Origin: Octopus bimaculoides
Lineage: Eukaryota
Direction: 5' to 3'
NCBI RefSeq assembly: GCF_001194135.2
Contig: NC_068986.1
Coordinates: 30,875,028-30,939,027, forward strand
DNA length: 64,000 nt
Below are positions 4,221 through 57,267 of the stretch, piece by piece; position 1 is the first letter of the stretch, and each line of letters opens with the position of its first letter. The notes beneath the pieces are model-generated. The model saw only the letters and a list, made by a program, of their open reading frames with translations. It did not search any database and had not been told where the DNA came from. A program made the translations under genes and the position numbers.

Positions 4221-5465
4221 TTGGGTCATCCCATAAATAATGCCTTTTTTTTCATACTTCTTTTATTTTTCAAAATTAAGATAATCACAGTTCTTTTTTA
4301 ATCTAAAATATACCCTCTTTCATTTTCTACAATATTTTTCCATCTGTCTGGTAGACTTGTAAGGACCCTCTTCCAAAATTTCCTTGTCCGTGATGAAAAA
4401 TACTCCTCCAGTACTGTTCTGACCTCATCTGCGGAATCAATGATAATCAGATGGGGCAATGTCTGGTGAATATGGTGGGTGGGGCATTGTTTCCTCTTCA
4501 AAGTGCTCCAACTTTTGGAATGTCGTCCACACTGTATGTGGCCGAGCATTATTCTGATAGAACACCTTTTGTCTTGAAACCAAATATGATCGTTTTTTTT
4601 CTTTCTTTCTAGCACTGGCTTAAGCTGCTCACAGTAGATCTCCTTTGTTATTGATTGGTTTGTGCTTAAAAGTTCAAAGTGGACTAAACCTTTCATATCC
4701 CACCAAACAGATAACAACACCTTATGTGGGTGAAGCCCTTCTTTAGCCTGGGGTGCTGGTGTTTCTTCTTTCCCTACCCACTGTCTTTGGCACTTGACTT
4801 TTTTTATAGAGAACCCATTTCTCATCACCAGTTGCTATTCAGTTAAAAAAAGCTTCATTCGTGAGACATGACAGCAAAGAATAGCACACATTCACTCTCT
4901 GTGTGTGATTAGACTCAGAAAGTTTGTGAGGAACCCATTGACCCAATTTGCTGACTTTTCCAATGGCACGCAAGTGTTGATGAATAGTTGAATGACCAAA
5001 TCCAAGCTTCTCTGCTAGTTTCTCAACAGTTATGATTGGATTTTGTTATACCAAGGTTTGCAGGACATCCTCATCAAGCTCTACAGATCTTTCAGGACAA
5101 CGCTTATCTTCTAGGTTGTAGTTTCTGGCTCAGAATTTCTGAAACCACTGTTGATACTGTCTTACACTTATTGTCCAGTCCCTGTATATTGCATTAATAT
5201 TCCTCACACTTACTGTTGCATTGTTGCCTTTATTGAATTCATAAAGCAAAATATGCTGAACATGCACCTTTGTCATTTCCATTATAGCTTTGAGAAAATA
5301 ACTTTTAAAATCAAACTGCACTCTTCAAAACTTGCACTGAAAATAAGTACAAGGTAAAATTACTGCTTGTTTTTATAACAAGTTGATGCAGGTAGTTTAT
5401 CCCGTCTCTCTCTGAATTTTAATTCATGCAATTGAAAAAACTGCATTATTTATGGGATGACCCAA
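4221..5465 (-). mobile_element. Full-length decayed mariner (Tc1/mariner DD34D) transposon, 1245 bp
   Basis: Perfect 23-bp TIRs (ttgggtcatcccataaataatgc at 4221-4243 and its reverse complement at 5443-5465) with TA on both sides. Minus-strand motifs are WVPHKL, TGDEKWVLY, QNNARPH and PYSPDIAPSDY. Stops and frameshifts are present. Confidence 0.93.
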
Positions 5466-12708: not shown

Positions 12709-13932
12709 ATTTGTGTTAATAGTTTTCTTAGCTAATTAAGCATTCTACAAAACAAAACATTAAAATAACTGTCTAAAGGACACAAGTTGAACTTAATTTT
12801 TGGTTTGCTTATGACATCTAAAATAGTTATAAGATTATGCTAATGCTGCCGTCCAACACTAGTTTCTTTAGATTCTACTGTTTTATTATTAGTATAAATA
12901 GGTCTTCTGATGAATCAGTCTTTGTAGTAAAGATTGTTTGCCAACATAACATGGCAGTCCTGGTTTAGGATGAATGTTGCTGTAATTGAGCCCCAGGAGA
13001 CATCATCTCCAGCTGGCTATATGACACGATCTGTGTCCTTGTGTTTTTGAACAAGGAAATCTAGCACTCCCACTCAGCTCCAAACAATATCTGTGTATCG
13101 CGATTTCCAGATTATTTGCCTTCATCAGCACAGAATAATTGTTCAGCTAGAAGTGGTGGTGCCAAATTCCCATTCGAAATATATCTCATTGTGAGATTTA
13201 AAAATAGTAATTTTTGAATCAGTCTTTGTTTTGATTTTTCTGTTTTCAATAACCATTTACTTACTTAACATTGCAATTGTTTATAACTAATCAATTACTC
13301 TTTTAGTTTTGTTCCAAAAGTATTTCCTTAATTTAAAATTTCTTTACCTGTAAATGCTTGCACATACTGCAAAAATTAAGAAAAATGAACCTGTTATGTT
13401 TCCATTCTTGTTTCATATGAGATTATATGTAAAAAAAAAAAGGCGAGAAAGAAATGATAACAAATGTTTGTTTTAAATTTAAATTATTTGATAAGTAAAT
13501 TTTCAAATAATTTACTTATCAAATTATTATGATGTAGTGATGTATACCTCACATCATAATATTAAGATAGTGTTTATGTTTTGAGTGAAAAAATTGTTTT
13601 GTATTAATATTTGTAATTAAAATATTTCGAAAATTTTCTTTACATCTGGGGCCGTTCTAGCCTAATTTTACCTTGTATACATATATTTAACTTCAAAAAT
13701 ATAAAATAGCTTTTTTTTTTTTTTTTTTTGAAAAAATATAATTCTTTTGGCTTTCTTGTTTTATTTTAAGCTGCTATATTCGCAATTAATTATTTTTGGT
13801 GAATTTATAGGTTTACTATATTTGAACTTATTAAAGTTTTACACTTTCATCTTTACTACCAAATATTATGGTATGTGGTACTTTTTTTCCGTTTTGGTTT
13901 TTGTACAGCTGCTTATATTTGTACTTGATTAG

Positions 13933-14037
13933 GTCAACTACCACAGTGACTTTGAAAAACAAAAGGGTACTTACACTGCTGTAGCTGAACCTATTGAATT
14001 GAAACAACATTTGGAAAACACAAAGAACATGAGTTTG
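13933..14037 (+). CDS. Lasp: Lasp nebulin-repeat exon A1 (105 nt, phase 0/0): VNYHSDFEKQKGTYTAVAEPIELKQHLENTKNMSL
   Basis: Bounded by ttgattag| and |gtataa. It is 35 open codons. The nebulin SxxxY signature forms across the junctions (S-L|V-N-Y). It is paralogous to five downstream exons. Confidence 0.9.
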
Positions 14038-14443
14038 GTATAAATTGTGAAAATTGATACCCTTTTTTTTTTTTTTTTTTTTAAATATATTGTAAGAAAG
14101 ATAATTTTAACATTTATTTTGTTAATTTTGAAAAAAACTTTGTAAAGTATAGCTGCAATTGGATATATGAATAATTGTGAAGTCATGAAAGCTTTTGAAT
14201 TATGTGCAGAGATTTTATTAAGATTTAGTTTTTATAATTGACATTTTAATATCGATTGCAATTTCTATTTAACTATTTAAAAGTTTTTTTTTTCTTCAAA
14301 TAATCAGTAATCTGTATTTTTAGTCAATAAGCTTCCATATATTACACATACTCACACATATACATACATACATAAATATATATTCACTATAATAGTGGTA
14401 GAGAAAAAACAAAATTATTAAGTCCTCCTTGATCCATTAACAG

Positions 14444-14548
14444 GTAAACTACCACAGTGATTTTGAGAAACAGAAGGGTTCCTATACTGCTGTTGCAGAA
14501 CCTATGGATGTAAAGCGACACTTGGAAAACACAAAAAACATCAGTCTG
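14444..14548 (+). CDS. Lasp: Lasp nebulin-repeat exon A2 (105 nt, phase 0/0): VNYHSDFEKQKGSYTAVAEPMDVKRHLENTKNISL
   Basis: Bounded by ccattaacag| and |gtatat. 29/35 aa identical to A1. The first 12 codons differ from A1 only by 4 synonymous changes. Confidence 0.9.
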
Positions 14549-15470
14549 GTATATTAAGTTATGATGCATGATTAAGATAATTATCCCATGTGTGCCTACT
14601 CTATTTTTGTTTTCCTATTATGACATGGGAGTTATTATCAATATATTTTCAAGATAAGATTTTCTCTAAATTTAGGCATTATTGAAGTAATGGTCTGCAT
14701 TAAATTTTTTTTTTATTTATATTAAGACCTTAATGTAACTCAGGGAAAATAAGTTACATTTGTAGATTCATAATTATAGTTGCAAAGGATAGTGTTATAG
14801 TATTGTAATAAACTTTTTTTTTTTGTATAGACTTACAAAAATATTGGAGCAAGACATATTCCTGTAAAGCATCTTTGATGTGAATGGGGTGGGGGCTGGA
14901 ACGTTGACTAAATTTTAAGTTTTAACTCAAAAGATTGTGAGCTCACTGTCTACTGTTTAAAAATCTTTATTTCTATCAGTTTGTCTTAGGTGGGGGCAAA
15001 TGAAATCTCCAGGTATTCTGGAAACCATGACTTTAGTGTTAGAGTAATCAGTACCAAGATGTTTATGGTGCTTGACTACTCGTGTTTAAGATCTGGAACA
15101 GGTTCCACGCTCAAATTTTTCTGACATGAGGAATATAAATTATATTTCTTATACATGTAGATAACAATTTTAATTGTGGGGGAATGAAATCTGTTTGATT
15201 ATAATATACTAAAAGGGCTCCTCCAATCCATTAGAACATTCTTCAAGAATTGATCCACCACATCAAGGGCATGTCATTTAATGGTTCCAACTGAGAATCA
15301 AAACTTGACATAGCTCACTAAAAGCTTATGCTCTAATGCATTTTGTATCTAATGTGGTACATAAACCAAAAGTTCAGTGGAGAAATAATTTGTTTGACAA
15401 CTCACTATATCACTATATTGATCATATTTGTAAGTATAAGAAATAAAAAATTCTTTTGATCCATTGATAG

Positions 15471-15575
15471 GTAAACTACCACAGTGATTTTGAGAAACAG
15501 AAAGGTTGCTATACAATGGTTGCAGAACCTATGGATATAAAACAACATTTGGAAAACACCAAAAATATCAGTCTG
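15471..15575 (+). CDS. Lasp: Lasp nebulin-repeat exon A3 (105 nt, phase 0/0): VNYHSDFEKQKGCYTMVAEPMDIKQHLENTKNISL
   Basis: Bounded by ccattgatag| and |gtatat. 31/35 aa identical to A2. The intron flanks are also similar to those of A2. Confidence 0.9.
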
Positions 15576-17249
15576 GTATATTTAGTTGTGATGCATGGAA
15601 GGGTTGTTTGTTGCCATTTGGTGTTGACTAGTTTTCTGAAATCCATTGATTCTGCTGCACAACAAATAATGAAAATATTAATCCCTTTTTTTTTTTTTTT
15701 TTTGGGGTGATATTTTTTTTATTGTGAAATTAATAAGAGCATTATATATTTGACATGATTGTAGCATATTTAGTTTCAACTTTTAATATTTGGATAATAT
15801 TCTTGAGTTTGGCTCCATTAGTAACAAAGATTTATATTCCTCATGTGATGTTAGGTGATGTAGAGTCAATTTTAAGAATATAAGGTTCTATCAAGACACA
15901 ATGGAAATTTTAGAAAAACCATTTTCAATATTTTTTTTTTTTTGTAACACTTCATTTCAAAAATATTTTACTCTTAAAAATAGTGTTTGTTTTCTGACCC
16001 CAGTTTTTTTAAAAATCATAAGTGTGCCTGTTTCTGTTTTCTACTCTAAATTAACTAATATTTTTGAAAAATAGCTAGTCATCAGTGTTCATTTATTTTT
16101 AATAGTGTAAAATCTGAAAATTTTTCTCACTTGTTGGAAAAAAAAAAANNNNNNNNNNTTAAGGGCCGATTTTGAGTTGCTAAGTCATATTAAAAAACAA
16201 GTGAAAGAGAATTTAATTATAGATATTTAATACTTCATCTATGATAAACAATAGTGTGATGTTTTGTAATTAGGGAGGGATCCATAAACAGGTGCCTTCA
16301 ACACTATATACTACAATGAATTATGATGTTCTGATTTTTTTGAAAGATCTTAACATGGAGTTTGCATGCCAGGAATTGAAACTGGGAATCAAAATCACTT
16401 CTGTGGTGCTTACCTTTTATTTTATAGAAATATTTTCATTTTCAGTCACCACTTTTCATAATCTTTGAGCAATTTCTTTTGCATACCAACATTTTATAAG
16501 AATATTGCTATAAATTAACTCATAGCTCAACATGTTTTAAACATTGTTATTTTACATTATCTATTGATGATGTTAGATGCTTTTCTCAGTATCATCTTAT
16601 TTTTGTTTATATTATGCATATTACTGAAGAAGTGAATATAATTTTAGGATGATATTGTACTAGTGCTTTAGGCCAGTTTGATTGAGCAAACCATGTCAAT
16701 TGTTTCTTTTTTCATATATAGTATATCTGAAACCACATTATTTAATGTGTTCTTTCTTTGACAGTAGGGCATGATTTGAGTGAGATTTAGCTGCTATTTT
16801 TAACATGTCAGGCAATCCTGTAGGCTCAAGTTGTAGTCAAGTATATCGACTGTGTTGACTCAATTATTGCTCCAATATATTGATTATGTGGGTGTAGGAC
16901 AATGTAGTTATAGGTTGTATTTTGACCAGGAATTACACTTGTATTTATCCACAGGAACTGAATAATGTCCTAAAGTTGGACATAGGAAATGATTAGTGTT
17001 CCAAGATTAATGTAATAAATAAAATATTTATTCTCTTAACTGCACAGAACCATAATTAGGAACTCCAGACAACTATGAAATCTATGATTATCTGTTTTTC
17101 TGTAAAGTTTTGTCTTACATTAGTTTTACTAATCTCACTAAATGTAGAAATAGGTTTTCTTTCCCCCTTTTTTTAATAACTTATTTCTAAAAAAATTTCT
17201 TCTTACAAATAAATGCACAACCTACTTACATGTGTGTATGTATGAATAT

Positions 17250-17287
<38 letters not shown>

Positions 17288-17397
17288 GTACATGCTTATA
17301 CACACATGTATATACATATAAACAAATATATATACATGTATACACACAAATGTATATTTTCATATACACGTATGTATATGCATTTATATATAGTAGT

Positions 17398-17907
17398 NNN
17401 NNNNNNNNNNNNNNNNNNNNNNNNNNNNNNNNNNNNNNNNNNNNNNNNNNNNNNNNNNNNNNNNNNNNNNNNNNNNNNNNNNNNNNNNNNNNNNNNNNNN
17501 NNNNNNNNNNNNNNNNNNNNNNNNNNNNNNNNNNNNNNNNNNNNNNNNNNNNNNNNNNNNNNNNNNNNNNNNNNNNNNNNNNNNNNNNNNNNNNNNNNNN
17601 NNNNNNNNNNNNNNNNNNNNNNNNNNNNNNNNNNNNNNNNNNNNNNNNNNNNNNNNNNNNNNNNNNNNNNNNNNNNNNNNNNNNNNNNNNNNNNNNNNNN
17701 NNNNNNNNNNNNNNNNNNNNNNNNNNNNNNNNNNNNNNNNNNNNNNNNNNNNNNNNNNNNNNNNNNNNNNNNNNNNNNNNNNNNNNNNNNNNNNNNNNNN
17801 NNNNNNNNNNNNNNNNNNNNNNNNNNNNNNNNNNNNNNNNNNNNNNNNNNNNNNNNNNNNNNNNNNNNNNNNNNNNNNNNNNNNNNNNNNNNNNNNNNNN
17901 NNNNNNN
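17398..17907. other. Assembly gap (510 N)
   Basis: N run following a CA/TA microsatellite. Confidence 0.99.
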
Positions 17908-18209
17908 TGTAGAACATCTGTCGTGTTTAGAAAAGATGTGAGTTCAAGTCCCACAGGCAGCCTATGACTTTTTCCATCCCAAGGTTTTTTTTAAACCCAA
18001 TATTTTACACTTTACTATTTATAACTTTATTTACTTCGAATTCAAATATCAAAAACATATATATATATATAGTAATTAGAAATGATTTTGTTTGATGCTC
18101 TCTACATGTAAATTTTAGAAATGCTTCTTAATCAGATTAGCAATGTTTCTCTCTTCCTTTCTTAATGATGATGATGATAATTTATTTGCTGTGAAATTAC
18201 CTATGACAG

Positions 18210-18314
18210 ATTCAGTACCACAGTGATTTCGAAAAGCAGAAAGGTAACGTCACACCCGTTGCTGACACTTTGGAAATGAAGCGTCATACAGAAAATGCAA
18301 AGAACATTAGTTTG
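18210..18314 (+). CDS. Lasp: Lasp nebulin-repeat exon A4 (105 nt, phase 0/0): IQYHSDFEKQKGNVTPVADTLEMKRHTENAKNISL
   Basis: Bounded by ctatgacag| and |gtacaa. It has the YHSDFEKQKG core and a VADT motif like the LASP1 nebulin repeat (VADTPEL). Confidence 0.9.
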
Positions 18315-19699
18315 GTACAAATTATATATTTGTATAGCATGAAATTATCAATTGCCTGTTGGCATTACAATTTTGTGCTACTAACCATCTTCTCCACCCA
18401 GTTTTTATCCCTTACCCTTGATCACTTTACTGTTGTTTACAATGATTGACTTCGCCTTCAATCAATACAGCATGTCTTGTTGAAAAGGCACACACTGAGT
18501 ATTTGTGTTATTTGTAACTCACTTTGATACTCAACCAGCTTTTGCTCCACCACTTCTTCTTATATCACTTCCTTTTATTTAGCTAATCTAGTTTTAGTTT
18601 GTGAAACTAGATATACTATTGATACATATACATACTTAGAGGTAAGTATAATTGTAATAAAACTCCTTCAAATCCTTCAATATCTAGTAACATTTAAGTG
18701 TTAAAAGAATTTATTATTTTGGTGTGTGTTGTTTTTCTTAAAGTATTAAACATGTTCAATATTTTATCACTTTAGCATGTATTAAAGTTCCTATTTCCAG
18801 TTTAATATAACCATCCGTGTTTGTTGTTTCTAATAATATTTGGTATCTACATGCAATTTGGTCAGTTTTTTAACAGAAGAATGAAATGCTGATTTTTCCA
18901 TTTTAGCCACTTCTATTCATCTACTCTTTTATTCATTCTACAACTGAAGCTAGTCAGTGAAATCAGACTAGGCTTTTATTTTTTCTGGTTACTGAAACCA
19001 GTACAGTTTTATGATACAGTTCTATTGAACCAATTGTATGGGTTTCTAGTGTGTGTGTATCTCCATTATTCTCTCTTTCATGTCTGTGGACAATATTTGA
19101 TACCTAGCTTTTGGCTAGATCTCTTTATACAATGTTTTAGATGAAATGTTTTCTATAGTGCTACATGACAAAACCCAGATTGTAAGAAGTAGATGCAGGT
19201 TTGTCTATTGATATTTATCCTTCAGTCAGTATATTTACTGTAAATTGTTACACTAGTGAATGCATAGAAAATAAAGGGATATTTGAATTGTTCATTGGAT
19301 TCTTCTTGTCTGAGCATGTAACTATGTCGTTTGAGCATAGCCTATTGTATATGAGACTATATCTATCTCTGTAGAGATTAGCTACAGAGATTTCAGATAA
19401 CCTCTAATTTGATATTGTTAATGAGCTATAATGTCTGAAACCTTTACAGCCATTATATATATATATATGTGATTTTTATTCTAATAAATATTCTACCTTT
19501 TATCTCATACCAAATACCTGCTGTTTGCATATATGTGTGAGTGCACACCTATTTTTGCACATATGAATTATAAGAAATGATATGAAATTCACTTGATATA
19601 AATTTTTTTTTTATACAGAAAGTTTTTAAAATAATGTACATTGAATGTATATTTATAAATATATATGCACACTCAAACACATATGCTGTTTTTTCCCCC

Positions 19700-20012
19700 N
19701 NNNNNNNNNNNNNNNNNNNNNNNNNNNNNNNNNNNNNNNNNNNNNNNNNNNNNNNNNNNNNNNNNNNNNNNNNNNNNNNNNNNNNNNNNNNNNNNNNNNN
19801 NNNNNNNNNNNNNNNNNNNNNNNNNNNNNNNNNNNNNNNNNNNNNNNNNNNNNNNNNNNNNNNNNNNNNNNNNNNNNNNNNNNNNNNNNNNNNNNNNNNN
19901 NNNNNNNNNNNNNNNNNNNNNNNNNNNNNNNNNNNNNNNNNNNNNNNNNNNNNNNNNNNNNNNNNNNNNNNNNNNNNNNNNNNNNNNNNNNNNNNNNNNN
20001 NNNNNNNNNNNN
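19700..20012. other. Assembly gap (313 N) inside the nebulin exon array
   Basis: N run preceded by tgctgttttttccccc. Confidence 0.99.
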
Positions 20013-20135
20013 CTTCTCCAAATGTCAATACAATGTAATGTTAAGTTGAATTGTTTGAAATGTGGTTCTCTGTATTTGTTGATGTGCTTCTGACTTATTT
20101 AATGAAAATAAATTGTTTTAGTCTTCCTTGTCCTA

Positions 20136-20177
<42 letters not shown>

Positions 20178-20244
20178 CTGTATTCTGTTTACCAAAGAAA
20201 CTGATTAGTTTCATGTCTGTGGAAATTACTATTAACATTCACAG

Positions 20245-20352
20245 ATGCATTATCGAAGTGATTTTACTAAACTGAAAGGGACAGCCACTCAAGTGACTGT
20301 GGAGTCTCTTGAAATGAAAAGACATGCTGAAAATGCCAAGAACCTCAGTGCG
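20245..20352 (+). CDS. Lasp: Lasp nebulin-repeat exon A5 (108 nt, phase 0/0): MHYRSDFTKLKGTATQVTVESLEMKRHAENAKNLSA
   Basis: Bounded by cattcacag| and |gtacta. It is 36 open codons, diverged but alignable to A4 and A6. Confidence 0.85.
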
Positions 20353-20700
20353 GTACTAACTCACTTAGTTTGGCTTGGTTGCTCCAGTTAGTCGTCTATT
20401 TTTTTTTTTTATCCCTCCCTTTCTGGTTTATCAAGATGCTAAATATTGATTACTCGAATTAAATTGATTACTTGAATTAAATTATCTAGAAACTTGACTA
20501 ATTTTTTAATACATTAGCTTTCCTTAAAAATACACTTGATTTCAAAATGAATAAAAATAAAACCTATTACAAACCTTTTCCTCAACAATAAATCTGTTTT
20601 TGGTACAGTACTTCGAAATGTACCAGATAATGGAAACTGTACAGTTCTCTAGGGTTATTTATGAAATTAAGTTATTGGTAGAATCTAAAGGTTTTCTGGG

Positions 20701-20790
20701 TCTCTATAGATTGCTGGTAGGATTGGCTGCACAGTTCATTGTTTACTGAGTCTCTATAGATTGCTGGTAAGATTGACTGTATAATTCATT
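20701..20790. repeat. Two-copy tandem duplication, 50-bp period (tctctatagattgctggta.gatt)
   Basis: Units start at 20701 and 20751. Confidence 0.85.
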
Positions 20791-22199
20791 GAAGCCCTTT
20801 CATTATCAGAATGGGTCAGTTAACTGCTGTAATCTTTGATTGTTCACATGGCGAGACTCTATCAAGAGATTCATAGTTCATTTCCATTTGAATGCATTTC
20901 TTCAATCTAACTATAGTCATTTAGTGAAGACATGAATAAGTTTTCAATGTCATTCCTGTCCAGTATTAACTACTTTATCGTTTGAAGCATCAGTCATTTT
21001 TTCTAATTGAAAATTTTCCTCCCACGGAATATTTTTGTAGGATGTTTGTGTGTGGATATATAGCATTATAAAGGCTTTACAAAAGCATAGCCTTTACTTA
21101 CAATGTGGTGAGTTATAGTCAAGTAGGCCAATTTGATCTAGGCAAATGTGGATAAACAGCCATTTACATACATATTGATGAAACTCTAAACTCTCTTTAA
21201 AACAAGGAAAACATTGACTTATGTGTTAAAAAAAGAAAGAACTGAAGCATCTGAATATTTTTAGTACTGATGTTAAACTTATCTTCTAACCGGAGGAAAG
21301 TAAATGTACCATTACTACAATTTCATTTACTAAGCTGATATCAGTCTAGCTTTGTTGCTATGGTATCAAAGGAGGCTGAACTGCTATAAAAATTTTGGAA
21401 TTTCGAGAGATGGAGATGCTCTTAGTACAGTTCTTGTAATCATCTAATGAAGTATTTTTTTGAAAAATAGCTTATCAAGACAAGTTTTAAATGTTGTAGA
21501 CTAAAAAAGATCAATTTGAATTTTATCAAGTAAATATCATTTGTAACCTTTTCAAAAGGCTTTCACTTTATTACATTACTATATGGTGTACTTAACTTAG
21601 TATCCCCTGAAATCTAGTGTATTTTTCCCCCTTTAAGCTCATTTTTCAAACATAACCAAAGTTTTATGTGATAAAACGAATCTGCAGAAAACACTTAGGT
21701 TGCCGTGTTAAAAAATGTTTGAAATCTATTTTAGCATCAATTAGAAACTGCAGCAACTGAGCTGGACATCTATCCACCTAGAATCATGTTCTATTTGTAG
21801 AAATTGGTCTTAAAACAGCAGCTTCACATGTCTCAATGTTTAGTTTAACTTCTGTTTTTTTGACTGGTTTAGCTTTTTTCCAACATTTGTTTTTACTTTT
21901 TAGTTTTATTTATTGTACACATCCTTAATTTTAGCATTTGATGATTGGTATCATCTGTGAAAATAGGCAGACTCTAACATATTTGATTGTTTTAAAAGTT
22001 ATTACCTGTTGGTCTCAATTTAATGAGGTACATACAGTTATTAGAATGTTCAAAGATCTATCACCAGTAGACAAATTGACAGTATTAGAGTACCTTCCTA
22101 CCATCTTGAATGCAGATACTTGAGTTTTGTTTAATTGCTAAATTAATAGTTGTTTGTTCTTTATTTTGTTGCTGTGTGAGCTTATACTAGAATTTAAAC

Positions 22200-22900
22200 A
22201 AAAATTTTTAATCTCTTTTCTCAATCTCTGCATGACTGTGTTGTGCTGGGAAGCAAATTACACTTAAGTCCACTATCAAACAACCAACTCGTTTCATAGA
22301 AGAGAACAGAGTATAATAATGTGTGGTAGTAAATGATTTCAATCTGGGATAGAAGTTCGTTAATTTCCAGAGGATATTAGGAATATACATGAACTGTTAA
22401 ACCAAAGCCTTCAAAAATTAGATCCATTCAACAGTTAGTAATAATTTTTTTTATATTAGGCCTTAGAATTCTAGAGGGGAGCAAGTGAAATATATTTCAA
22501 GCGCATTAGCTACGTATTTGAAATGATTCCAAATAGAAATCCAATCTAGGATGTGCTCTTGATTCATCAAGTCTCCTGTATCACATTAAAATGGTCACTC
22601 CCCACCACATAGAGAGTAGCTGTTTTCAACAACCACTAGTATTAGCAACAATAAATAACACCTGGAAAATTTTCAGGTAGAAAAATTCCCATGGCTAAAG
22701 TGTTAAATGGTAAGTTGTTGTTGATTTGTTATCCCAGAGTTGCTTGATTCCTTAAATGTTTTAAAAGCTTTTGCAAACTTTGAATGTTTGGTTGAAGTAT
22801 TACCAGTGCTAGCAGAGATCTGCACTTATTTCCTTGCAGTTGCAAAACTCATGTCATTTGCACAATAACCAAACAAATGCACTATTTATATTAAATTTCT
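22200..22900 (-). mobile_element. Decayed hAT (SPIN/Charlie, GTF2IRD2-like) transposase remnant
   Basis: Minus-strand fragments resembling NxxSLQLQGN and FYPRLKSF..T..LFSSMK match the hAT C-terminal region. It is heavily frameshifted. Confidence 0.5.
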
Positions 22901-23208
22901 TTATATAATTAAAATATTTTTGTATGAAAGTTTTCGTTACAAATACAAATATATTAATATATGTTTTTAAAAATAAAAACTAATTTTCTTTTTAAAAAAA
23001 TTCCACTTAAAGAATGTAATTTTAACGGATCAGAATTTCCTTATACAGAGTTTTACAATTTTTTATAAAATGAAAAATAAATACAAAAGCAAACGTGCTC
23101 ATTAAAAAAAAAAGAAAAAAAAGAAAACCTTGTAATTTCAAAATTAAAGTTGCCTAAATGTTTTGAATCTTGGGATAGGGTTAAAGTTAAATTTATTGAC
23201 TTCTGCAG

Positions 23209-23316
23209 ATTCAGTATCACAGTGACTTTGAAAAGCAGAAAGGGTCTGCAGCGAAATTGACAGCAGATTCTATGGAGATGAAGAGACATCTGGAAAATGC
23301 CAAGAATGCCAGCATG
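23209..23316 (+). CDS. Lasp: Lasp nebulin-repeat exon A6 (108 nt, phase 0/0): IQYHSDFEKQKGSAAKLTADSMEMKRHLENAKNASM
   Basis: Bounded by gacttctgcag| and |gtactg. It is 36 open codons with the same repeat core. Confidence 0.9.
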
Positions 23317-26650: not shown

Positions 26651-28481
26651 CAATCAGATTACCTTTAAGGTGGGGTATGGCCCTGTATATATTGTAGCAT
26701 CATCATCTTGCAGATAGGAGCAATGAGTCTTTGCTAATCTGCCAACTACTGGATATCATATTTTTTCCTAATTATTGAAATATTTCTGACTTTATAGTGG
26801 TTCAATTCTTGAATCCTACTGATTTTTATTTATAAAGGTGCTGAATTAATGTTTGAGTTTGGAGTCTGTAGCAAGGCTAAGCTTATGACTTTATTTGTGC
26901 TCATTCAGCACTCATTCAATCCAACCATTTGTGAGGTACAAATAACTTTAGACTCTAAAGCTACCATAAAGAAACAACAACAGCATACAAACAAACCATT
27001 CTTGGTACAAGACTTTAACAATAAATGAAAATCAAGAACATTTTCATGGAGATCTAATTTGTCCAACATCGAGGTAAAATGGAAAATACACAGCTGGTGG
27101 TATTATAAACTAATGACTCGGTAAAGATGCTTAGTAATGAAATTTCTAATCTTATCAGAAAAGAATGACATAGCAGTTACTATTTTTATATATCTTAATT
27201 TCTTGAGAGCTGGGATTTTATTTTTGTGGCTGAATTTTTGCAGATGGGAAGTCAAACTGCAAATTCAAGCTGATTCAATTTTCCATTAGAAATTTTAGAA
27301 GAAAGTAAACTTGTGTTTGTGGTTAGTTGAATATGATGTATAGTAACAAATTTTATTGAAATAAATTGCAGCATCTTAGATAATTGGTCTTCTGGTTTAT
27401 ATTAAGTTTAAAACTTGAATTTGTAGTGAGTTAATTTTTGTTGGTTGTTTTTTCTTATGGTTATTATTAATATTTATTGACATTATCTGATTACTAGACA
27501 AGTGTAAAATGGGGTCTTAGAACCAAACATATACATTAGCTTTACTTAATTCAGTTCATTTTTAGTAATATATTTATTGGGATTAGATTCAAGTGTTGTT
27601 AATTAGTCCACGGTCAGCTCTGATCAAGTAGAACTACAATCAAAAATATTCCAACTGTGACTTGTTTATGTGTGTATATATCTATATATATATATATTTA
27701 TCTCCAGAATTACATTGTTCCATATATCCTATTCTTAATATTCTAGGGTGATATTTAAGGGAATTTAGCTGCTATTACTTGCAGGTTGAATGACTCGTAG
27801 TGCTTACCTCATTGGCTCATAGATTCTAGTGTAGAGACATTTTATATTGTTTTCATAATGTAATAAATTGAAATTTTTGTTACAGGTATTCCTGAAGAAC
27901 TCTAGTTAAAATAATTCTTTTAATGACTCTGCCTATCTGCATATCTCATTGCAAATCCTGTCAGTTTTATTTGATACTCCACTTAGACAGAGGCATTGCT
28001 GTGTGGCTAAGAGTAGGTTCTGTCCCACTCTGCAACATCTTGGGCTGGTACCTTCTTCAGTTGCCTTGGGCTGGCCAATCTCTTATGAGTGAATTTCACT
28101 GATGGAAACTATTGATTCCATTGTGTGTGAAAGAGAGTGTTGATATTGACATTTCTTGTTGACACTATTATCCATTACTTTATGCTTTTAAAGACCTGTG
28201 GAGTATAAAAATCCCTTACCCCAAAATAGGTGAGGGTTGGTGACAGGAAGAGCATCTGGTTGTAAAATCCTGTGTTAAGAGCGAGTCGTGTCGAGGTCAT
28301 GTTAGCATGGAAAAATGGACACTAAAATTGAACAAGCCATGTAATCAGTTTAAATCTTTATTACAGGTATTCCTGAACTTTCATAGCTGAAGTAACTCTA
28401 TCACCAATTCTGCCCATCTACATAGCTTTATTGTAAACCATATTCTGTATTTTATTGAGTACTTCCTTATTTACCTTTCAG

Positions 28482-28656
28482 ATTAAATATCATGAAGATT
28501 TTGAGAAATCGAAAGGAAAATTCATCACCATTGCTGATGATCCAGAATTGCAACGCATCAAGCAGAATACTCAGATTCAGAGTGAGATCAGCTATAAGGG
28601 TATCAAACAAACCCGGGATTTTATGGAACAACGACGACCAGATCAAGCTGCTCAGG
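28482..28656 (+). CDS. Lasp: Canonical Lasp nebulin-repeat exon (175 nt, phase 0/1): IKYHEDFEKSKGKFITIADDPELQRIKQNTQIQSEISYKGIKQTRDFMEQRRPDQAAQ
   Basis: Strong acceptor ccttatttacctttcag| and donor cagg|gtaaca. It closely resembles the LASP1/nebulette repeats (YKEEFEK.KG...VADTPELQRIK; IKYHEEFEKS). Confidence 0.93.
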
Positions 28657-33700: not shown

Positions 33701-33907
33701 ATGGTCTTCCTCCTCCTCCTCCTATGTCTTCTACTACTACTACTGCTGCAGCTGGTGGAGGTGGTAGTGGGGTCCCCACAATTGGCAGCATTGGGCGACC
33801 TGGTAGGATCAGTGACTACGACCCCTACCAAGAGAATTCATCCTTCAACTCCCCATACTCTGCTAAGTCCCAGGCCACTACCATTTATGATTCTAGAATT
33901 GGACAAG
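33701..33907 (+). CDS. Lasp: Lasp linker exon (207 nt, phase 1/1): DGLPPPPPMSSTTTTAAAGGGGSGVPTIGSIGRPGRISDYDPYQENSSFNSPYSAKSQATTIYDSRIGQ
   Basis: Bounded by ctctttggtag| and |gtgagt. It is in frame with the 28482 exon. It is a GC-richer island with a poly-Pro/Gly low-complexity linker and a DYDP motif. Confidence 0.85.
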
Positions 33908-36823: not shown

Positions 36824-36859
36824 TGGACAAATCCAAAAATACTTCAGCAGCTAAGACAG
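36824..36859 (+). CDS. Lasp: Candidate linker microexon (36 nt, phase 1/1): VDKSKNTSAAKT
   Basis: Bounded by ttttttag| and cag|gttggt. It preserves the frame and has no stop. Its donor flank is shared with the 38356 exon. Confidence 0.6.
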
Positions 36860-38355: not shown

Positions 38356-38403
38356 TTGAAAAAGTAGCCAAAAGCAAAGAAAGTTCTAAGTCATCTAAGA
38401 AAG
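38356..38403 (+). CDS. Lasp: Candidate linker microexon (48 nt, phase 1/1): VEKVAKSKESSKSSKK
   Basis: Bounded by ctgtttctag| and aag|gttggt. It preserves the frame and is K/S-rich like 36824. Its donor flank gttggttagcacttgca matches gttggtttagcacatgca of 36824. Confidence 0.6.
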
Positions 38404-39087: not shown

Positions 39088-39099
39088 TTAGATCTACAG
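39088..39099 (+). CDS. Lasp: Candidate linker microexon (12 nt, phase 1/1): VRST
   Basis: Long T tract, then tgtgctacccag|ttagatctacag|gttcgt. It preserves the frame. Confidence 0.45.
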
Positions 39100-42903: not shown

Positions 42904-43574
42904 ATCAAATGTCAATCTTCTATGATTTCAAGGTGGTGAGCTGGCAGTCCTATTAGTACACTGAGCTAAATGCTTAGCAGTATTTCATGAGTCTTTTCGT
43001 TCGTAGTTCAAATTCTGCCATGATAAAATAAGTCCCAATCGAACACTGGGGTTGATGTAATTGACTTATTGCCTCCCTCGAAATTGCTGGCCTTGTGCCA
43101 AAATTTGAAATTGATATTCTATGACTTTGATTGTCATTACCTGAGTAAAACAGTGCTATGATGTTTGCATTGTTTGCTGGCATTATGATCTGTGATTCTG
43201 TGTGTTCAAAAAAAAAAAAGAAAAAAAGTGAAATCCTTACTTGAGAAACAGATGAGTTAGCAACAAGAAGAGAATCTGACTGTAAAATGCTATCAATTTT
43301 CAACTCATTTAATTTATTAAAAGAGTCTATTTGAGTGTCATTTTAGATATAAATTACAAGTAGTGACTTTATATTTAATGTTGGTTGCTAATCCAGCTTA
43401 TGACACTAAAACCATTGTAACTCATAAACTCCCTAGCAATTTAATCATGCTCGGTATCTGTGTTGGATTAGTAATTTAGAGTCAGGAATGTTTATCAATA
43501 AAATAAGTTTGCTGGCATTTTATCCTCACAACAATTATAAAGTTTCTAGAAAGTAGGATTTTATTATTTGTGTT

Positions 43575-44356
43575 TTGTGACAGATACACAAACTGTAGCA
43601 GTAGAAGAGAGCTCAGTTGAATATTTAACTGATCTTGACTTTGCTGATGATCTTGCTTTGATATCCCCTTGTATTAAAGATGCAGAATCTTTGTTACAAG
43701 CACCGGAGAAAGCACCAAACCAGGTTAGCCATTACTGCAATGAGAGTAAGATAGAGTTTATCACGATCTCCTCCAAGTTAACTGAATTTAAATTGCTCAG
43801 TAATATATCCATCAAAAGCGTTGACGACTTAAAATGTCTTGGATCACATAAAGTAGACTCCCAAAAGGACTTTCGCATCCGCAAAGCTCTTGCTTGGGAT
43901 GCATGTAACAGACTTGATAAGATCTGATACTCAAATCTTTCATCCATGTTAAAAGTTAAAATATTTAGAACACTAATTAAGCCAGTCCTTCGTTATGGAT
44001 CAAAGACCTGGACCTTATCAGCTCTCTTAGAAAAACAACTAGATTGAACATATACCAACCTGCTCAGAAAGATACAGAATATCAGTTGGAATAACATCTA
44101 TGGAAATCTGATACCAATATCCCTCGGGCTAAAACAGAAGTGCCTACAATCTGCTGGCCACTGTCATTGAGCAGAGAAAGAGGTTATCTCATCCCTGCTC
44201 CTATGGCATCCCTCTAGAAGTGTTTTCTCCAGGAAACTGACATTTCCAGATGCTATATTTCTGGACTCAGGGCTGGATGTTAGAGATCTGAACACAGCAA
44301 TGCAAGACCATGTAGTGTGGAAAGGGATTGTCAATGGAATTCCAAAGGATGACGAT
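43575..44356 (+). mobile_element. RTE-type LINE 3' fragment (reverse transcriptase C-terminus), decayed
   Basis: YLTDLDFADDLALIS, then KCLGS, RIRKALAW and YGSKTWTL, with in-frame stops. It ends in a gat-type repeat. Confidence 0.85.
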
Positions 44357-50267: not shown

Positions 50268-50363
50268 TTGAGAATGGTTCTTCTCGTCGCATTGGATCAA
50301 TTGCTGATTATGACCCTATGAATAACCAATATGGCTCCCTTGTAGCAGACCAGGAGCAGACAG
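50268..50363 (+). CDS. Lasp: Lasp linker exon (96 nt, phase 1/1): (V/I)ENGSSRRIGSIADYDPMNNQYGSLVADQEQT; a possible alternative donor at 50381 adds GRVYDP
   Basis: Acceptor gcatttctcttccag|. RRIGSIADYDP resembles the linker motif of invertebrate Lasp proteins as I recall it, and it echoes RISDYDP in the 33701 exon. Confidence 0.85.
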
Positions 50364-51167
50364 GTAGAGTGTATGATCCAGGTACCAATTGCTGAGCACG
50401 GGAACATTTCCAAGTGCTTTTTTCTCAACATCTTTATATAGATAAACAAGTATTTTGAGCTTCAGCAATCTATTCTGCTTTCTTAGTTTAGAGAGTGAAT
50501 CTTTTCCTTTGTCTTCAAAATACATCAAATCTGAGAATATTTCTGAAGCATTTTAATACCTTTGGAAACAACTTGATTTGAGGATCCATCAAATCTTATT
50601 CTATGAAGACTTGGTTTTTTTTTTAGAGAATCAAACCACTGGCAGCATACTGCATCATGCATCACTAAACAATCTTAGATATGACTACCGTTTCATTTTC
50701 ATTTGTTTTTTTGGCTTAAAACCACTCTTAATTCTGTTTACACCCTTTTTTTTTTTGCTGGCATTTATTGGATTTTAAAAAAATATTTATTAAATTTTTC
50801 TTATTTGGTTTGTTTTTATAAATATTTTTTATGCTTCATGGCTTTCTCCAATTTTCTTTTTGCTCTCCTGGAAACTATAAACATAGGAAGGAAAAAAAAG
50901 TCTTGATTTTTGTCTGAGGAATTTAATATCCAACATATTTCAACATCTTCTCCAACTGTCAGGAGTAAACTCATTAACAATTTTGAGCACAGACAAGTTT
51001 TTTAAACTTGTGTGTCCTGAAGCAAATGTCAAATTAACAAATACTTCACAAATCTTTAACAGCTTGCTTTAATATGCACCACTTCCTTGCTAACAGTTTA
51101 ACCTTGGTACTTTACACATAACTAACGAATTCCTGAATAAATCTTAACAACTCAACCAATTATGTAA

Positions 51168-55400: not shown

Positions 55401-55438
55401 CTCCTGCACACCCACAGAATCCGTATGCTGGAAAAGGG
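55401..55438 (+). CDS. Lasp: Lasp pre-SH3 exon (38 nt, phase 1/0): APAHPQNPYAGKG
   Basis: Bounded by caatttttag| and a consensus ggg|gtaagt. It ends in phase 0 at a Gly-rich motif, comparable to the sequence just before the LASP1 SH3 domain. Confidence 0.75.
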
Positions 55439-55784
55439 GTAAGTGTTGAATTTGTAATATCTTGTAAGGCTATCTTAACGAAACATACTGACTCTTGTTG
55501 ACGTCAACATGTTTGCATTCTGTTTTCTCATGTTTATATATAAAAAGGTCTCAAAGCACCTTCTCTCTTCTTGTGGATGTTTTTATTCAAACATCCTTGA
55601 CGAGAGAAGGTGCTTTGCACTATGGTAACATATATTGGCTTTATCTTTTTTTTTTGTTTGTTAGAGTGGAGAGCATGGTTTTTACTTCTAGTTCTCTAAA
55701 CCCCAACCACTTTTCAGTGTAGGCTGGGTGCATTTAATCATCCCACTGACAGTAGAGAAGTTGTTTCTGAAAAGGACCACAGAG

Positions 55785-56987: not shown

Positions 56988-57267
56988 NNNNNNNNNNNNN
57001 NNNNNNNNNNNNNNNNNNNNNNNNNNNNNNNNNNNNNNNNNNNNNNNNNNNNNNNNNNNNNNNNNNNNNNNNNNNNNNNNNNNNNNNNNNNNNNNNNNNN
57101 NNNNNNNNNNNNNNNNNNNNNNNNNNNNNNNNNNNNNNNNNNNNNNNNNNNNNNNNNNNNNNNNNNNNNNNNNNNNNNNNNNNNNNNNNNNNNNNNNNNN
57201 NNNNNNNNNNNNNNNNNNNNNNNNNNNNNNNNNNNNNNNNNNNNNNNNNNNNNNNNNNNNNNNNNNN
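56988..57267. other. Assembly gap (280 N), probable site of the SH3-coding last exon
   Basis: A pyrimidine tract runs into the gap, and no SH3-coding sequence was found elsewhere downstream. Confidence 0.55.

What the first reader, a model, noticed from the sequence alone, without database searches (positions are those of the whole stretch)
13933..23316. Tandem array of six extra single-nebulin-repeat cassette exons in a Lasp gene
Seen: six paralogous exons, each exactly one nebulin repeat (four of 105 nt, two of 108 nt), all phase 0/0. They sit between the upstream Lasp exons and the canonical exon at 28482. Synonymous-only differences in the A1/A2 core indicate purifying selection. Known: Lasp proteins typically have about two nebulin repeats, and nebulette and nebulin grew by repeat-exon duplication with alternative splicing. 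Inference: this is a lineage-specific, nebulette-like expansion. Any subset of the six keeps the frame (64 combinations if independent). Skipping all of them gives an ordinary Lasp, while including them gives an actin-binding scaffold of tunable length, for example in mantle or arm muscle. Mutually exclusive use is also possible. I cannot tell from here whether this has been described.
Basis: partly seen in the sequence, partly recalled or inferred. Interest (0 to 1): 0.85.

Follow-up and report, generated by a model that had tools for sequence, protein, structure and literature searches.

The report
Octopus Lasp nebulin-repeat cassette exons
The six exons are real, each encoding one actin-binding nebulin repeat of the Octopus bimaculoides Lasp gene, but five are already in the RefSeq gene model and similar exon arrays occur in snails, bivalves, annelids and a ribbon worm, so this is an under-described old feature, not an octopus invention.

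Summary
Observation confirmed exactly. There are six AG/GT-flanked, phase-0 exons: A1 13933-14037, A2 14444-14548, A3 15471-15575, A4 18210-18314 (105 nt each), and A5 20245-20352, A6 23209-23316 (108 nt each). Each encodes one nebulin repeat (Pfam PF00880, E=4.5e-44 for the concatenated exons plus the canonical exon). The three N gaps lie in introns, at least 233 nt from any exon. Splicing A1-A4, A6 and the downstream window exons reproduces RefSeq XP_052824630.1 (O. bimaculoides Lasp X1) residue for residue, so five of the six are already annotated. A5 appears in O. sinensis X28, an Argonauta model and a cuttlefish-like RNA contig. A seventh cassette (A0) and the LIM exons lie upstream of the window. 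Annotated isoforms range from no cassettes to six (A0-A4 plus A6), so cassette use is supported and cluster-wide mutual exclusion is not. The lineage-specific claim largely fails. Patella has at least nine such exons, Haliotis nine cassettes, bivalves three or four, and annelids and a nemertean one or two. Only the A1-A3 triplication looks octopus-specific. I found no paper describing this, and published surveys say invertebrate Lasp has two repeats. Moderate interest.

The parts
13933..14037 (+). Cassette exon A1, 105 nt, phase 0/0, one nebulin repeat (VNYHSDFEKQKGTYTAVAEPIELKQHLENTKNMSL)
   Evidence: AG/GT flanks. Part of RefSeq XP_052824630.1. Pfam Nebulin.
14444..14548 (+). Cassette exon A2, 105 nt, phase 0/0. 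Skipped in O. vulgaris model P0001.
15471..15575 (+). Cassette exon A3, 105 nt, phase 0/0. Skipped in O. sinensis P0147 and P0063 and in O. vulgaris P0165.
18210..18314 (+). Cassette exon A4, 105 nt, phase 0/0. It has a decapodiform counterpart with 86% amino-acid identity.
20245..20352 (+). Cassette exon A5, 108 nt, phase 0/0. It is not in O. bimaculoides RefSeq X1. It is used in O. sinensis X28 and an Argonauta model (LIM-A5-A6-C) and in a decapodiform RNA contig (A4-A5-A6-C).
23209..23316 (+). Cassette exon A6, 108 nt, phase 0/0. Skipped in O. sinensis P0143 and P0063. It is the only cassette in O. vulgaris P0011.
28482..28656 (+). Canonical Lasp exon (second nebulin repeat plus the start of the linker), 175 nt, phase 0 in and phase 1 out. 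Present in every isoform examined.
33701..33907 (+). Linker cassette exon L1, 207 nt, phase 1/1. Alternatively used in O. sinensis models.
36824..36859 (+). Linker cassette exon L2, 36 nt, phase 1/1.
38356..38403 (+). Linker cassette exon L3, 48 nt, phase 1/1.
39088..39099 (+). Candidate 12-nt micro-exon encoding VRST. It is present in several O. sinensis isoforms, is AG/GT-flanked, and has a pyrimidine tract upstream.
   Evidence: Pattern search and in-frame reconstruction. This is a candidate only.
50268..50381 (+). Linker cassette exon L4, 114 nt, phase 1/1.
55401..55438 (+). Last Lasp exon found in the window (APAHPQNPYAGKG), followed by a consensus GTAAGT donor. The RefSeq X1 model reads through this donor to a stop at 55499-55501. 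The SH3 exon is not in the window.
16149..16158 (.). Assembly gap (10 N) in intron A3-A4, after a poly-A run.
17398..17907 (.). Assembly gap (510 N) in intron A3-A4, flanked by CA/TA microsatellite sequence. It ends 303 nt before A4.
19700..20012 (.). Assembly gap (313 N) in intron A4-A5. It ends 233 nt before A5.

Best explanation
The window is the middle of the 153-kb Lasp gene (LIM and SH3 domain protein) of Octopus bimaculoides. A1-A6 are six of its seven single-nebulin-repeat cassette exons; the seventh, A0, and the LIM exons lie upstream of the window.

Every cassette begins at the same point of the repeat (x-x-Y-H...) and ends at ...N-x-S-x. The intron therefore splits the S-x-x-x-Y-H motif, which is the Lasp form of nebulin's SDxxYK. 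Any exon-exon junction rebuilds the motif and keeps the frame.

Alternative splicing then yields LIM-(nebulin repeat)n-linker-SH3 proteins with n from 2 (all cassettes skipped) to 8 (A0-A4 plus A6 included). A5 is used in a separate short form, LIM-A5-A6-C.

Inferred mechanism: each 35/36-aa repeat binds one actin subunit along the filament, as nebulin repeats do. Repeat number would then set the length and avidity of the actin-binding segment that links LIM and SH3 partners. A second set of phase-1 linker cassettes varies the spacer.

The array is not an octopus invention. It is an old lophotrochozoan feature with birth and death of copies. A0, A4, A5 and A6 predate the octopus/decapodiform split. 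A1-A3 are a later tandem triplication seen so far only in Octopus.
For: Shown:
- Exon anatomy and phases.
- Nebulin repeat identity, E=4.5e-44.
- Spliced window exons equal RefSeq XP_052824630.1 over 402 aa.
- Gene span of 153 kb, with LIM and Nebulin Pfam hits on the product.
- Isoform catalogue with 0 to 6 cassettes in O. sinensis, O. vulgaris and Argonauta models.
- Decapodiform transcript contigs with C only, A0+C, and A4+A5+A6+C.
- Paralogues are old and constrained: A1-A2 pS 0.66 and pN 0.07; A2-A3 pS 0.35 and pN 0.06; other pairs are saturated at synonymous sites but 50-70% identical in protein.
- Octopus versus decapodiform orthologue pN/pS: 0.11/0.68 (A4), 0.16/0.41 (A5), 0.18/0.37 (A6).
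- The same one-repeat-per-exon, phase-0 architecture in Patella (9 exons) and Pinctada (3 exons found) genomic DNA.
- Multi-cassette Lasp proteins across molluscs, two annelids and a nemertean.
- A1-A3 clade with 80% bootstrap, A0 plus decapodiform A0 67%, A5 clade 74%.

From the literature: nebulin repeats bind actin 1:1 through the SDxxYK motif (review PMC9140763). [quoted passage not shown]
Against: - No read-level RNA evidence was available for O. bimaculoides itself. Isoforms are computed gene models (Gnomon and others) plus four assembled transcript contigs from other cephalopods.
- In O. sinensis, 20 of 25 models carry the same full set A0-A4 plus A6, and most isoform diversity is in the linker. 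Cassette skipping could therefore be minor in some tissues.
- A5 was never seen together with A0-A3 in octopod models. The old UniProt model that joins A3-A4-A5 is chimeric.
- Actin binding, 1:1 stoichiometry and any length-tuning effect are inferred from the family, not tested.
- Deep orthology between octopus and gastropod or bivalve cassettes is weakly supported: 33% bootstrap for A0 with the first gastropod cassette.
- The SH3 exon is missing from the window and from the O. bimaculoides model.
Confidence: 0.8

Rival explanations
1. Fixed expansion. The cassettes are essentially constitutive in octopus, so the protein is an 8-repeat Lasp. The shorter annotated isoforms are splicing noise, truncated models or annotation artefacts.
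For: 20 of 25 O. sinensis models and O. bimaculoides X1 carry the identical set A0-A4 plus A6. Most model diversity is in the linker exons.
Against: O. vulgaris has seven models with no cassette, and others with one, two or five. Independent decapodiform transcript contigs show C only, A0+C and A4-A5-A6+C. A5 is conserved under purifying selection yet absent from the long form. Bivalve, gastropod and nemertean genes also carry many cassette-variant isoforms.
Confidence: 0.12
2. One reading: a cephalopod- or octopus-specific, nebulette-like expansion of an otherwise two-repeat Lasp.
For: A1-A3 form a tight clade (80% bootstrap) known only from Octopus species. A4-A6 group with cephalopod sequences in the NJ tree.
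Against: Arrays with the same exon architecture exist in Patella and Pinctada DNA. Multi-cassette Lasp proteins occur in Haliotis, Gigantopelta, oysters, mussels and scallops, and with 1-2 cassettes in annelids and a nemertean. A0 resembles the first cassette of gastropods.
Confidence: 0.05
3. Mutually exclusive exon cluster: one cassette chosen per transcript, as in Dscam-type clusters.
For: In octopod models A5 never co-occurs with A0-A4. All exons are the same size and phase.
Against: Up to six cassettes are joined in one model, including RefSeq X1, which the window reproduces. A decapodiform transcript joins A4-A5-A6. No docking or selector-type inverted repeats were found, only low-complexity TA/CA matches.
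Confidence: 0.03
4. Assembly artefact: the copies are haplotype duplicates or mis-joined contigs around the N gaps.
For: There are three gaps inside the array, and A2 and A3 are 89% identical.
Against: The copies differ at 11-50% of nucleotides with saturated synonymous sites. Similarity extends only about 15-22 nt into the introns. Each copy has its own orthologue in the independently assembled O. sinensis and O. vulgaris.
Confidence: 0.01

Closest known systems
RefSeq/GenBank Lasp gene models of Octopus (O. bimaculoides XP_052824630.1; O. sinensis isoforms X1-X28, e.g. XP_036359930.1 and XP_036359953.1; O. vulgaris CAI97241xx)
   Same: This is the same gene. A1-A4 and A6 are exons of the O. 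bimaculoides model (100% over 402 aa). A5 is in O. sinensis X28.
   Different: Nothing differs at the sequence level. The models are computed and unaccompanied by any description of the repeat array that I could find. O. bimaculoides X1 lacks A5 and the SH3 domain (read-through at 55438).
Vertebrate NEBL gene (LASP2/LIM-nebulette with 3 repeats, and nebulette with over 20 repeats) and the alternatively spliced single-repeat exons of nebulin's Z-disc region
   Same: It belongs to the nebulin family, repeat exons arose by tandem duplication, and isoforms differ in the number of actin-binding repeats between terminal modules (PMC3305314). The nebulin Z-disc exon splicing is from my own knowledge and was not checked here.
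   Different: Here the LIM domain is kept in all complete models. Repeat number runs from 2 to 8, not 3 versus more than 20. There is no super-repeat organisation. The variation comes from cassette skipping within one transcription unit, not from alternative promoters, as far as is seen. The lineage is protostome, so the expansion is independent of the chordate one.
Drosophila Lasp
   Same: It is an orthologous LIM-nebulin-linker-SH3 protein and the sole nebulin-family gene. Its linker length varies by splicing (PMC4137052). [quoted passage not shown]
   Different: Drosophila isoforms all have two nebulin repeats and differ only in the linker. The octopus gene varies both the repeat number and the linker.
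Lasp / 'nebulin-like' / 'Nebulette-like' gene models of other molluscs (Haliotis rufescens 773 aa, Patella caerulea, Pecten, Ostrea, Crassostrea, Mytilus)
   Same: They have the same architecture: LIM, then 3-9 extra 35-aa repeats, then the canonical repeat, linker and SH3. Each repeat is one 105/108-nt phase-0 exon where DNA was available. They have many cassette-variant isoforms.
   Different: Copy number and the individual copies differ. Patella 1-6, Haliotis 2-4 and Octopus A1-A3 are each lineage-specific duplications.

Membership tests
Lasp (LIM and SH3 protein) family | N-terminal LIM domain | tested here: met
   It is not in the window (tblastn negative). The RefSeq protein that the window exons reproduce exactly begins with the LIM domain.
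Lasp (LIM and SH3 protein) family | Nebulin repeats directly after the LIM domain | tested here: met
   Pfam PF00880, 7 stretches, E=4.5e-44. The canonical repeat exon is at 28482.
Lasp (LIM and SH3 protein) family | C-terminal SH3 domain | tested here: inconclusive
   There is no SH3 exon in the window, and the O. bimaculoides model reads through the donor at 55438. The O. sinensis, O. vulgaris and Argonauta orthologues all end in SH3. The absence is most likely an assembly or window limit.
Nebulin repeat (PF00880) as actin-binding module | A unit of about 35 aa with a conserved S-x-x-x-Y-[KH] motif | tested here: met
   Every junction gives S-x|x-x-Y-H, and units are 35/36 aa.
Nebulin repeat (PF00880) as actin-binding module | Binds one actin subunit per repeat | not testable with these tools
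   Inferred from the family (PMC9140763). The PDB sequence search gave no hit.
Cassette (skippable) exons | Transcripts both with and without the exon | tested here: met
   Annotated models lack A0, A2, A3, A6, or all cassettes. Decapodiform RNA contigs carry 0, 1 or 3 cassettes. The caveat is that these are models and contigs from related species, not O. bimaculoides reads.
Mutually exclusive exon cluster | Only one exon of the cluster per transcript | tested here: not met
   Six cassettes co-occur in RefSeq X1 and in most O. sinensis models.
Nebulette / nebulin proper | More than 20 repeats (with super-repeats in nebulin) and no LIM domain | tested here: not met
   There are at most 8 repeats in annotated octopus isoforms, or 9 if all seven cassettes were used. 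The LIM domain is present.

The most novel reading that the evidence does not exclude
Lophotrochozoan Lasp may be an overlooked protostome counterpart of the nebulette/nebulin system. In this reading a single gene uses arrays of one-repeat cassette exons (1-2 in annelids and nemerteans, 3-4 in bivalves, 7 in octopus, 9 or more in abalone and limpets) to dial the number of actin-binding modules per muscle or cell type. That could contribute to the very different thin-filament and dense-body geometries of molluscan muscles, such as obliquely striated, cross-striated tentacle and catch muscle. A5 may define a separate short programme. LIM-less starts inside the array (O. vulgaris P0004, Patella P0103) may reflect nebulette-like internal promoters. 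This would contradict the published generalisation that non-chordate Lasp has two repeats and that repeat expansion is chordate-specific (PMC3305314).
Probability: 0.3. Interest if true: 0.6.

Novelty: new member of a known kind. Interest (0 to 1): 0.38.

Why it matters
Published surveys state that invertebrate Lasp has two nebulin repeats and that larger repeat arrays are confined to chordates (PMC3305314, PMC4137052). The sequence data contradict this. Molluscs, annelids and a nemertean carry extra repeats in Lasp, and where genomic DNA could be read (octopus, Patella, Pinctada) each is a one-repeat exon. Annotated isoforms have from 2 to about 10 repeats.

If repeat number is regulated by tissue, it offers a simple natural experiment on how the number of nebulin modules affects thin-filament and Z-body architecture. 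The animals concerned have very diverse muscle types.

For this window specifically nothing new needs to be annotated. Five of the six exons are in RefSeq X1. The sixth, A5, appears in the O. bimaculoides UniProt model A0A0L8HPL4 and in an O. sinensis isoform, though not in X1.

Tried and rejected
- Orthologous genomic DNA from O. bimaculoides v2, O. sinensis, Argonauta and Haliotis could not be fetched. O. vulgaris P0001 and Mytilus P0046 are not on record. As a result I could not check the gaps against another cephalopod assembly or date the A1-A3 triplication.
- The LIM, A0 and SH3 exons were searched for in the window by tblastn with short words. None was found.
- Extra or decayed cassette copies were searched for with nhmmer. 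None was found.
- Docking or selector-type inverted repeats for mutually exclusive splicing were sought. Only low-complexity TA/CA matches turned up, for example 17297-17364 against 20136-20183. Rejected.
- The PDB sequence search with the cassettes gave no hit.
- Literature: eight searches found no description of a molluscan or lophotrochozoan Lasp repeat array (and the lookup in 52). One search was badly designed and uninformative. Björklund et al. 2010 (J Mol Biol) is not held, so I cannot say whether it mentions such arrays.
- Deep orthology of individual cassettes between classes was tested by NJ bootstrap on 37 columns. Support is too weak for firm statements. One bootstrap run failed.
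- I considered and rejected an assembly-duplicate origin. See the rival explanations.
Full report
**What is there**

The window is AT-rich (32% GC) and has five N runs. Three of them lie inside the finding: 16149-16158, 17398-17907 and 19700-20012. A motif scan of the six-frame translation found exactly six paralogous peptides on the + strand. Trimming to splice sites gave the following exons:

| Exon | Coordinates | Length |
|---|---|---|
| A1 | 13933-14037 | 105 nt |
| A2 | 14444-14548 | 105 nt |
| A3 | 15471-15575 | 105 nt |
| A4 | 18210-18314 | 105 nt |
| A5 | 20245-20352 | 108 nt |
| A6 | 23209-23316 | 108 nt |

Each exon is preceded by AG and followed by GTA, and none has a stop codon. 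Concatenated with the exon at 28482, they give seven Pfam Nebulin (PF00880) stretches at E=4.5e-44. An nhmmer profile of the exons finds these six plus the canonical exon and nothing else, so there are no decayed copies in the readable sequence.

**The gaps**

All three N runs are intronic. Two lie in intron A3-A4 and one in intron A4-A5. The nearest exon edges are 574, 303 and 233 nt away, and two of the three gaps sit next to homopolymer or microsatellite sequence. Because every cassette is phase 0/0, the frame across a gap is irrelevant. The order A3-A4-(A5)-A6 is the order found in mRNA models from independently assembled genomes. A cassette hidden inside a gap cannot be excluded from the window alone. 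None of about 40 isoforms from three Octopus species contains an unknown cassette.

**Identity of the gene**

A protein search returned Lasp / "LIM zinc-binding domain-containing Nebulette" models from O. vulgaris, O. sinensis, Argonauta hians and O. bimaculoides. I spliced A1, A2, A3, A4, A6, 28482-28656, 33701-33907, 36824-36859, 38356-38403, 50268-50381 and 55401-55501. The result reproduces residues 119-520 of RefSeq XP_052824630.1 (Lasp isoform X1, O. bimaculoides) without a single mismatch.

So the window is O. bimaculoides, and five of the six exons are already annotated. That gene spans 153 kb. The LIM exons are not in the window. Nor is a seventh cassette, A0 (VQYHMDFEKNKDKYTVVADNPDMQRCLMASKNASL). 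The SH3 exon is also absent from the window. The RefSeq model reads through the consensus donor at 55438 into a short intronic tail.

**Are they cassettes?**

I decomposed the available isoforms into cassettes.

- Most O. sinensis models, and O. bimaculoides X1, are A0-A1-A2-A3-A4-A6-C.
- Variants lack A0 (P0146), A2 (P0001), A3 (P0147, P0165), A6 (P0143), or A3 and A6 (P0063).
- O. vulgaris has A6-C (P0011) and seven models with C alone.
- O. sinensis X28 and the Argonauta model are LIM-A5-A6-C.

Assembled transcript contigs from decapodiforms give independent support:

- C only: P0038 and P0042.
- An A0 orthologue plus C: P0030.
- A4-, A5- and A6-like plus C: P0002 = L001, from run SRR9970006. 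It is identical to Acanthosepion pharaonis Lasp in the shared exons.

Cassette use is therefore supported, and cluster-wide mutual exclusion is refuted. In octopod models A5 never joins A0-A4, which may mean a separate short programme.

These are computed models and contigs. I had no O. bimaculoides reads. In O. sinensis most of the 28 isoforms differ in five phase-1 linker cassettes, not in the nebulin cassettes.

**Selection and age**

| Comparison | pS | pN | Note |
|---|---|---|---|
| A1 vs A2 | 0.66 | 0.07 | the first 12 codons carry four differences, all synonymous |
| A2 vs A3 | 0.35 | 0.06 | |
| A4 vs decapodiform counterpart | 0.68 | 0.11 | |
| A5 vs decapodiform counterpart | 0.41 | 0.16 | |
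| A6 vs decapodiform counterpart | 0.37 | 0.18 | |
| C vs decapodiform counterpart | 0.67 | 0.07 | |

The paralogue values are, and the octopus-decapodiform values. The remaining paralogue pairs are mostly saturated at synonymous sites, yet the cassettes stay 50-70% identical to one another in protein. Sequence similarity extends only 15-22 nt into the flanking introns. These are old, constrained paralogues, not assembly duplicates.

**How widespread is it?**

- Haliotis rufescens "nebulin-like" has nine cassettes before the canonical repeat.
- Patella caerulea has at least eight cassettes in its protein model.
- Ostrea and Saccostrea have four.
- Mytilus, Pecten and Gigantopelta have three, and Aplysia has one.
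- The annelids Lamellibrachia and Owenia have two and one.
- The nemertean Tubulanus uses two different cassettes in different isoforms.
- The arthropod, nematode, bryozoan and brachiopod sequences retrieved have only the canonical pair.

Genomic DNA could be fetched for two species. Patella has nine tandem AG/GT-flanked phase-0 exons of 105 or 108 nt, one repeat each. Pinctada has three. The exon architecture is the same as in octopus.

An NJ tree groups the cassettes as follows (bootstrap of 200 replicates on 37 columns):

| Group | Bootstrap |
|---|---|
| A1-A3 (Octopus only) | 80% |
| A0 with the decapodiform A0 | 67% |
| A5 clade (A5, Argonauta and decapodiform counterparts) | 74% |
| A4 with its decapodiform counterpart | 26% |
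| A6 with its Argonauta and decapodiform counterparts | 24% |
| Patella 1-6 | 66% |
| Haliotis 2-4 | 94% |
| A0 with the first cassette of gastropods | 33% |

The last grouping is weak and only suggestive.

The best reading is an ancient array with lineage-specific gain and loss of copies. At least A0, A4, A5 and A6 were present in the coleoid ancestor, and A1-A3 arose as a later triplication.

**Mechanism**

Shown:

- The intron falls inside the S-x-x-x-Y-H motif, the Lasp form of SDxxYK. Every cassette ends ...S-x and starts x-x-Y-H. The LIM exon ends ...QSS, and the canonical exon starts IKYH.
- Any junction therefore rebuilds the motif and the frame, giving LIM-(repeat)n-linker-SH3 with n from 2 to 8 in annotated forms.

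Inferred:

- Each repeat contacts one actin subunit, as in nebulin (review PMC9140763).
- Splicing therefore tunes the length and avidity of the actin-binding segment.

No binding or localisation data exist for the octopus protein.

**Comparison with what is known, and novelty**

At the sequence level the exons are known. They are in RefSeq and GenBank models, some of which are even named "nebulin-like".

I found no paper describing the array. A survey of LIM proteins states that the non-human metazoan LASP proteins it examined have two repeats. It also states that larger nebulin-repeat proteins are known only from vertebrates and amphioxus (PMC3305314). Björklund et al. 2010 could not be read.

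I therefore file this as a new, uncharacterised member of a known kind. It belongs to the nebulin-family genes that vary repeat number through single-repeat exons, and it is closest in logic to NEBL (LASP2 and nebulette).

It is not nebulette. The LIM domain is retained, there are at most 8-9 repeats, and there are no super-repeats.

**Verdict**

Interest is moderate.

Noticed in passing
window 33701-33907, 36824-36859, 38356-38403, 39088-39099, 50268-50381: A second set of symmetric cassette exons, all phase 1/1, encodes the linker between the nebulin repeats and SH3. One of them is a candidate 12-nt micro-exon (VRST). Combinations of these exons account for most of the 28 O. sinensis isoforms.
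   Followed up: partly
window 55438-55501: RefSeq O. bimaculoides Lasp X1 ignores a consensus GTAAGT donor at 55439 and reads 20 codons into the intron to a stop, so the model lacks SH3. No SH3 exon is found anywhere in 55.5-64 kb. It may lie in the gap 56988-57267 or beyond the window. This is probably an annotation or assembly defect.
   Followed up: partly
window 21938-22123 (+): The old UniProt model A0A0L8HPL4_OCTBM joins the tail of A1, then A3, A4 and A5, to this intronic ORF as its terminal exon. The ORF has no Pfam hit, so the model looks chimeric. It is, however, the only O. bimaculoides model that contains A5.
   Followed up: partly
window 4298-4828 (-): A mariner-type transposase remnant (Pfam Transposase_1, E=3.6e-21) lies in the large intron upstream of A1.
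   Followed up: yes
window 43568-43927 (+): This ORF carries an 'LDFADDLALIS' motif reminiscent of a LINE reverse transcriptase. It has no Pfam hit at E<0.01, so it remains unconfirmed.
   Followed up: partly
window 27858-27946 and 28339-28427: An 89-nt direct repeat (73% identity, 481 nt apart) sits just upstream of the canonical exon. Each copy contains TTACAG|GTATTCC. Its origin and meaning are unknown.
   Followed up: no
window 13709-13729, 14060-14081, 15683-15703: Runs of 18-20 T lie about 200 nt upstream of A1, about 25 nt downstream of A1, and about 110 nt downstream of A3. They could be relics of the duplicated unit or binding sites for U-rich-binding splicing factors.
   Followed up: no
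window 17246-17391 and 20129-20191: CA/TA microsatellites lie near the two large gaps and are partly complementary to each other on either side of exon A4. They are low-complexity, and I did not treat them as a meaningful RNA pairing.
   Followed up: partly
O. vulgaris P0004; Patella P0103 / L002 923-1027: Two gene models begin inside the repeat array without a LIM domain. In Patella an additional repeat exon lies upstream of the annotated start. These could be truncated models or LIM-less, nebulette-like transcripts from an internal promoter.
   Followed up: no
window A1-A6 donor sites: All six cassettes have G|GTAY donors without G at +5. The L1 and L5 exons have GTGAGT and GTAAGT donors. 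This fits weak, regulated splice sites, but it may simply be inherited from the duplicated unit.
   Followed up: no
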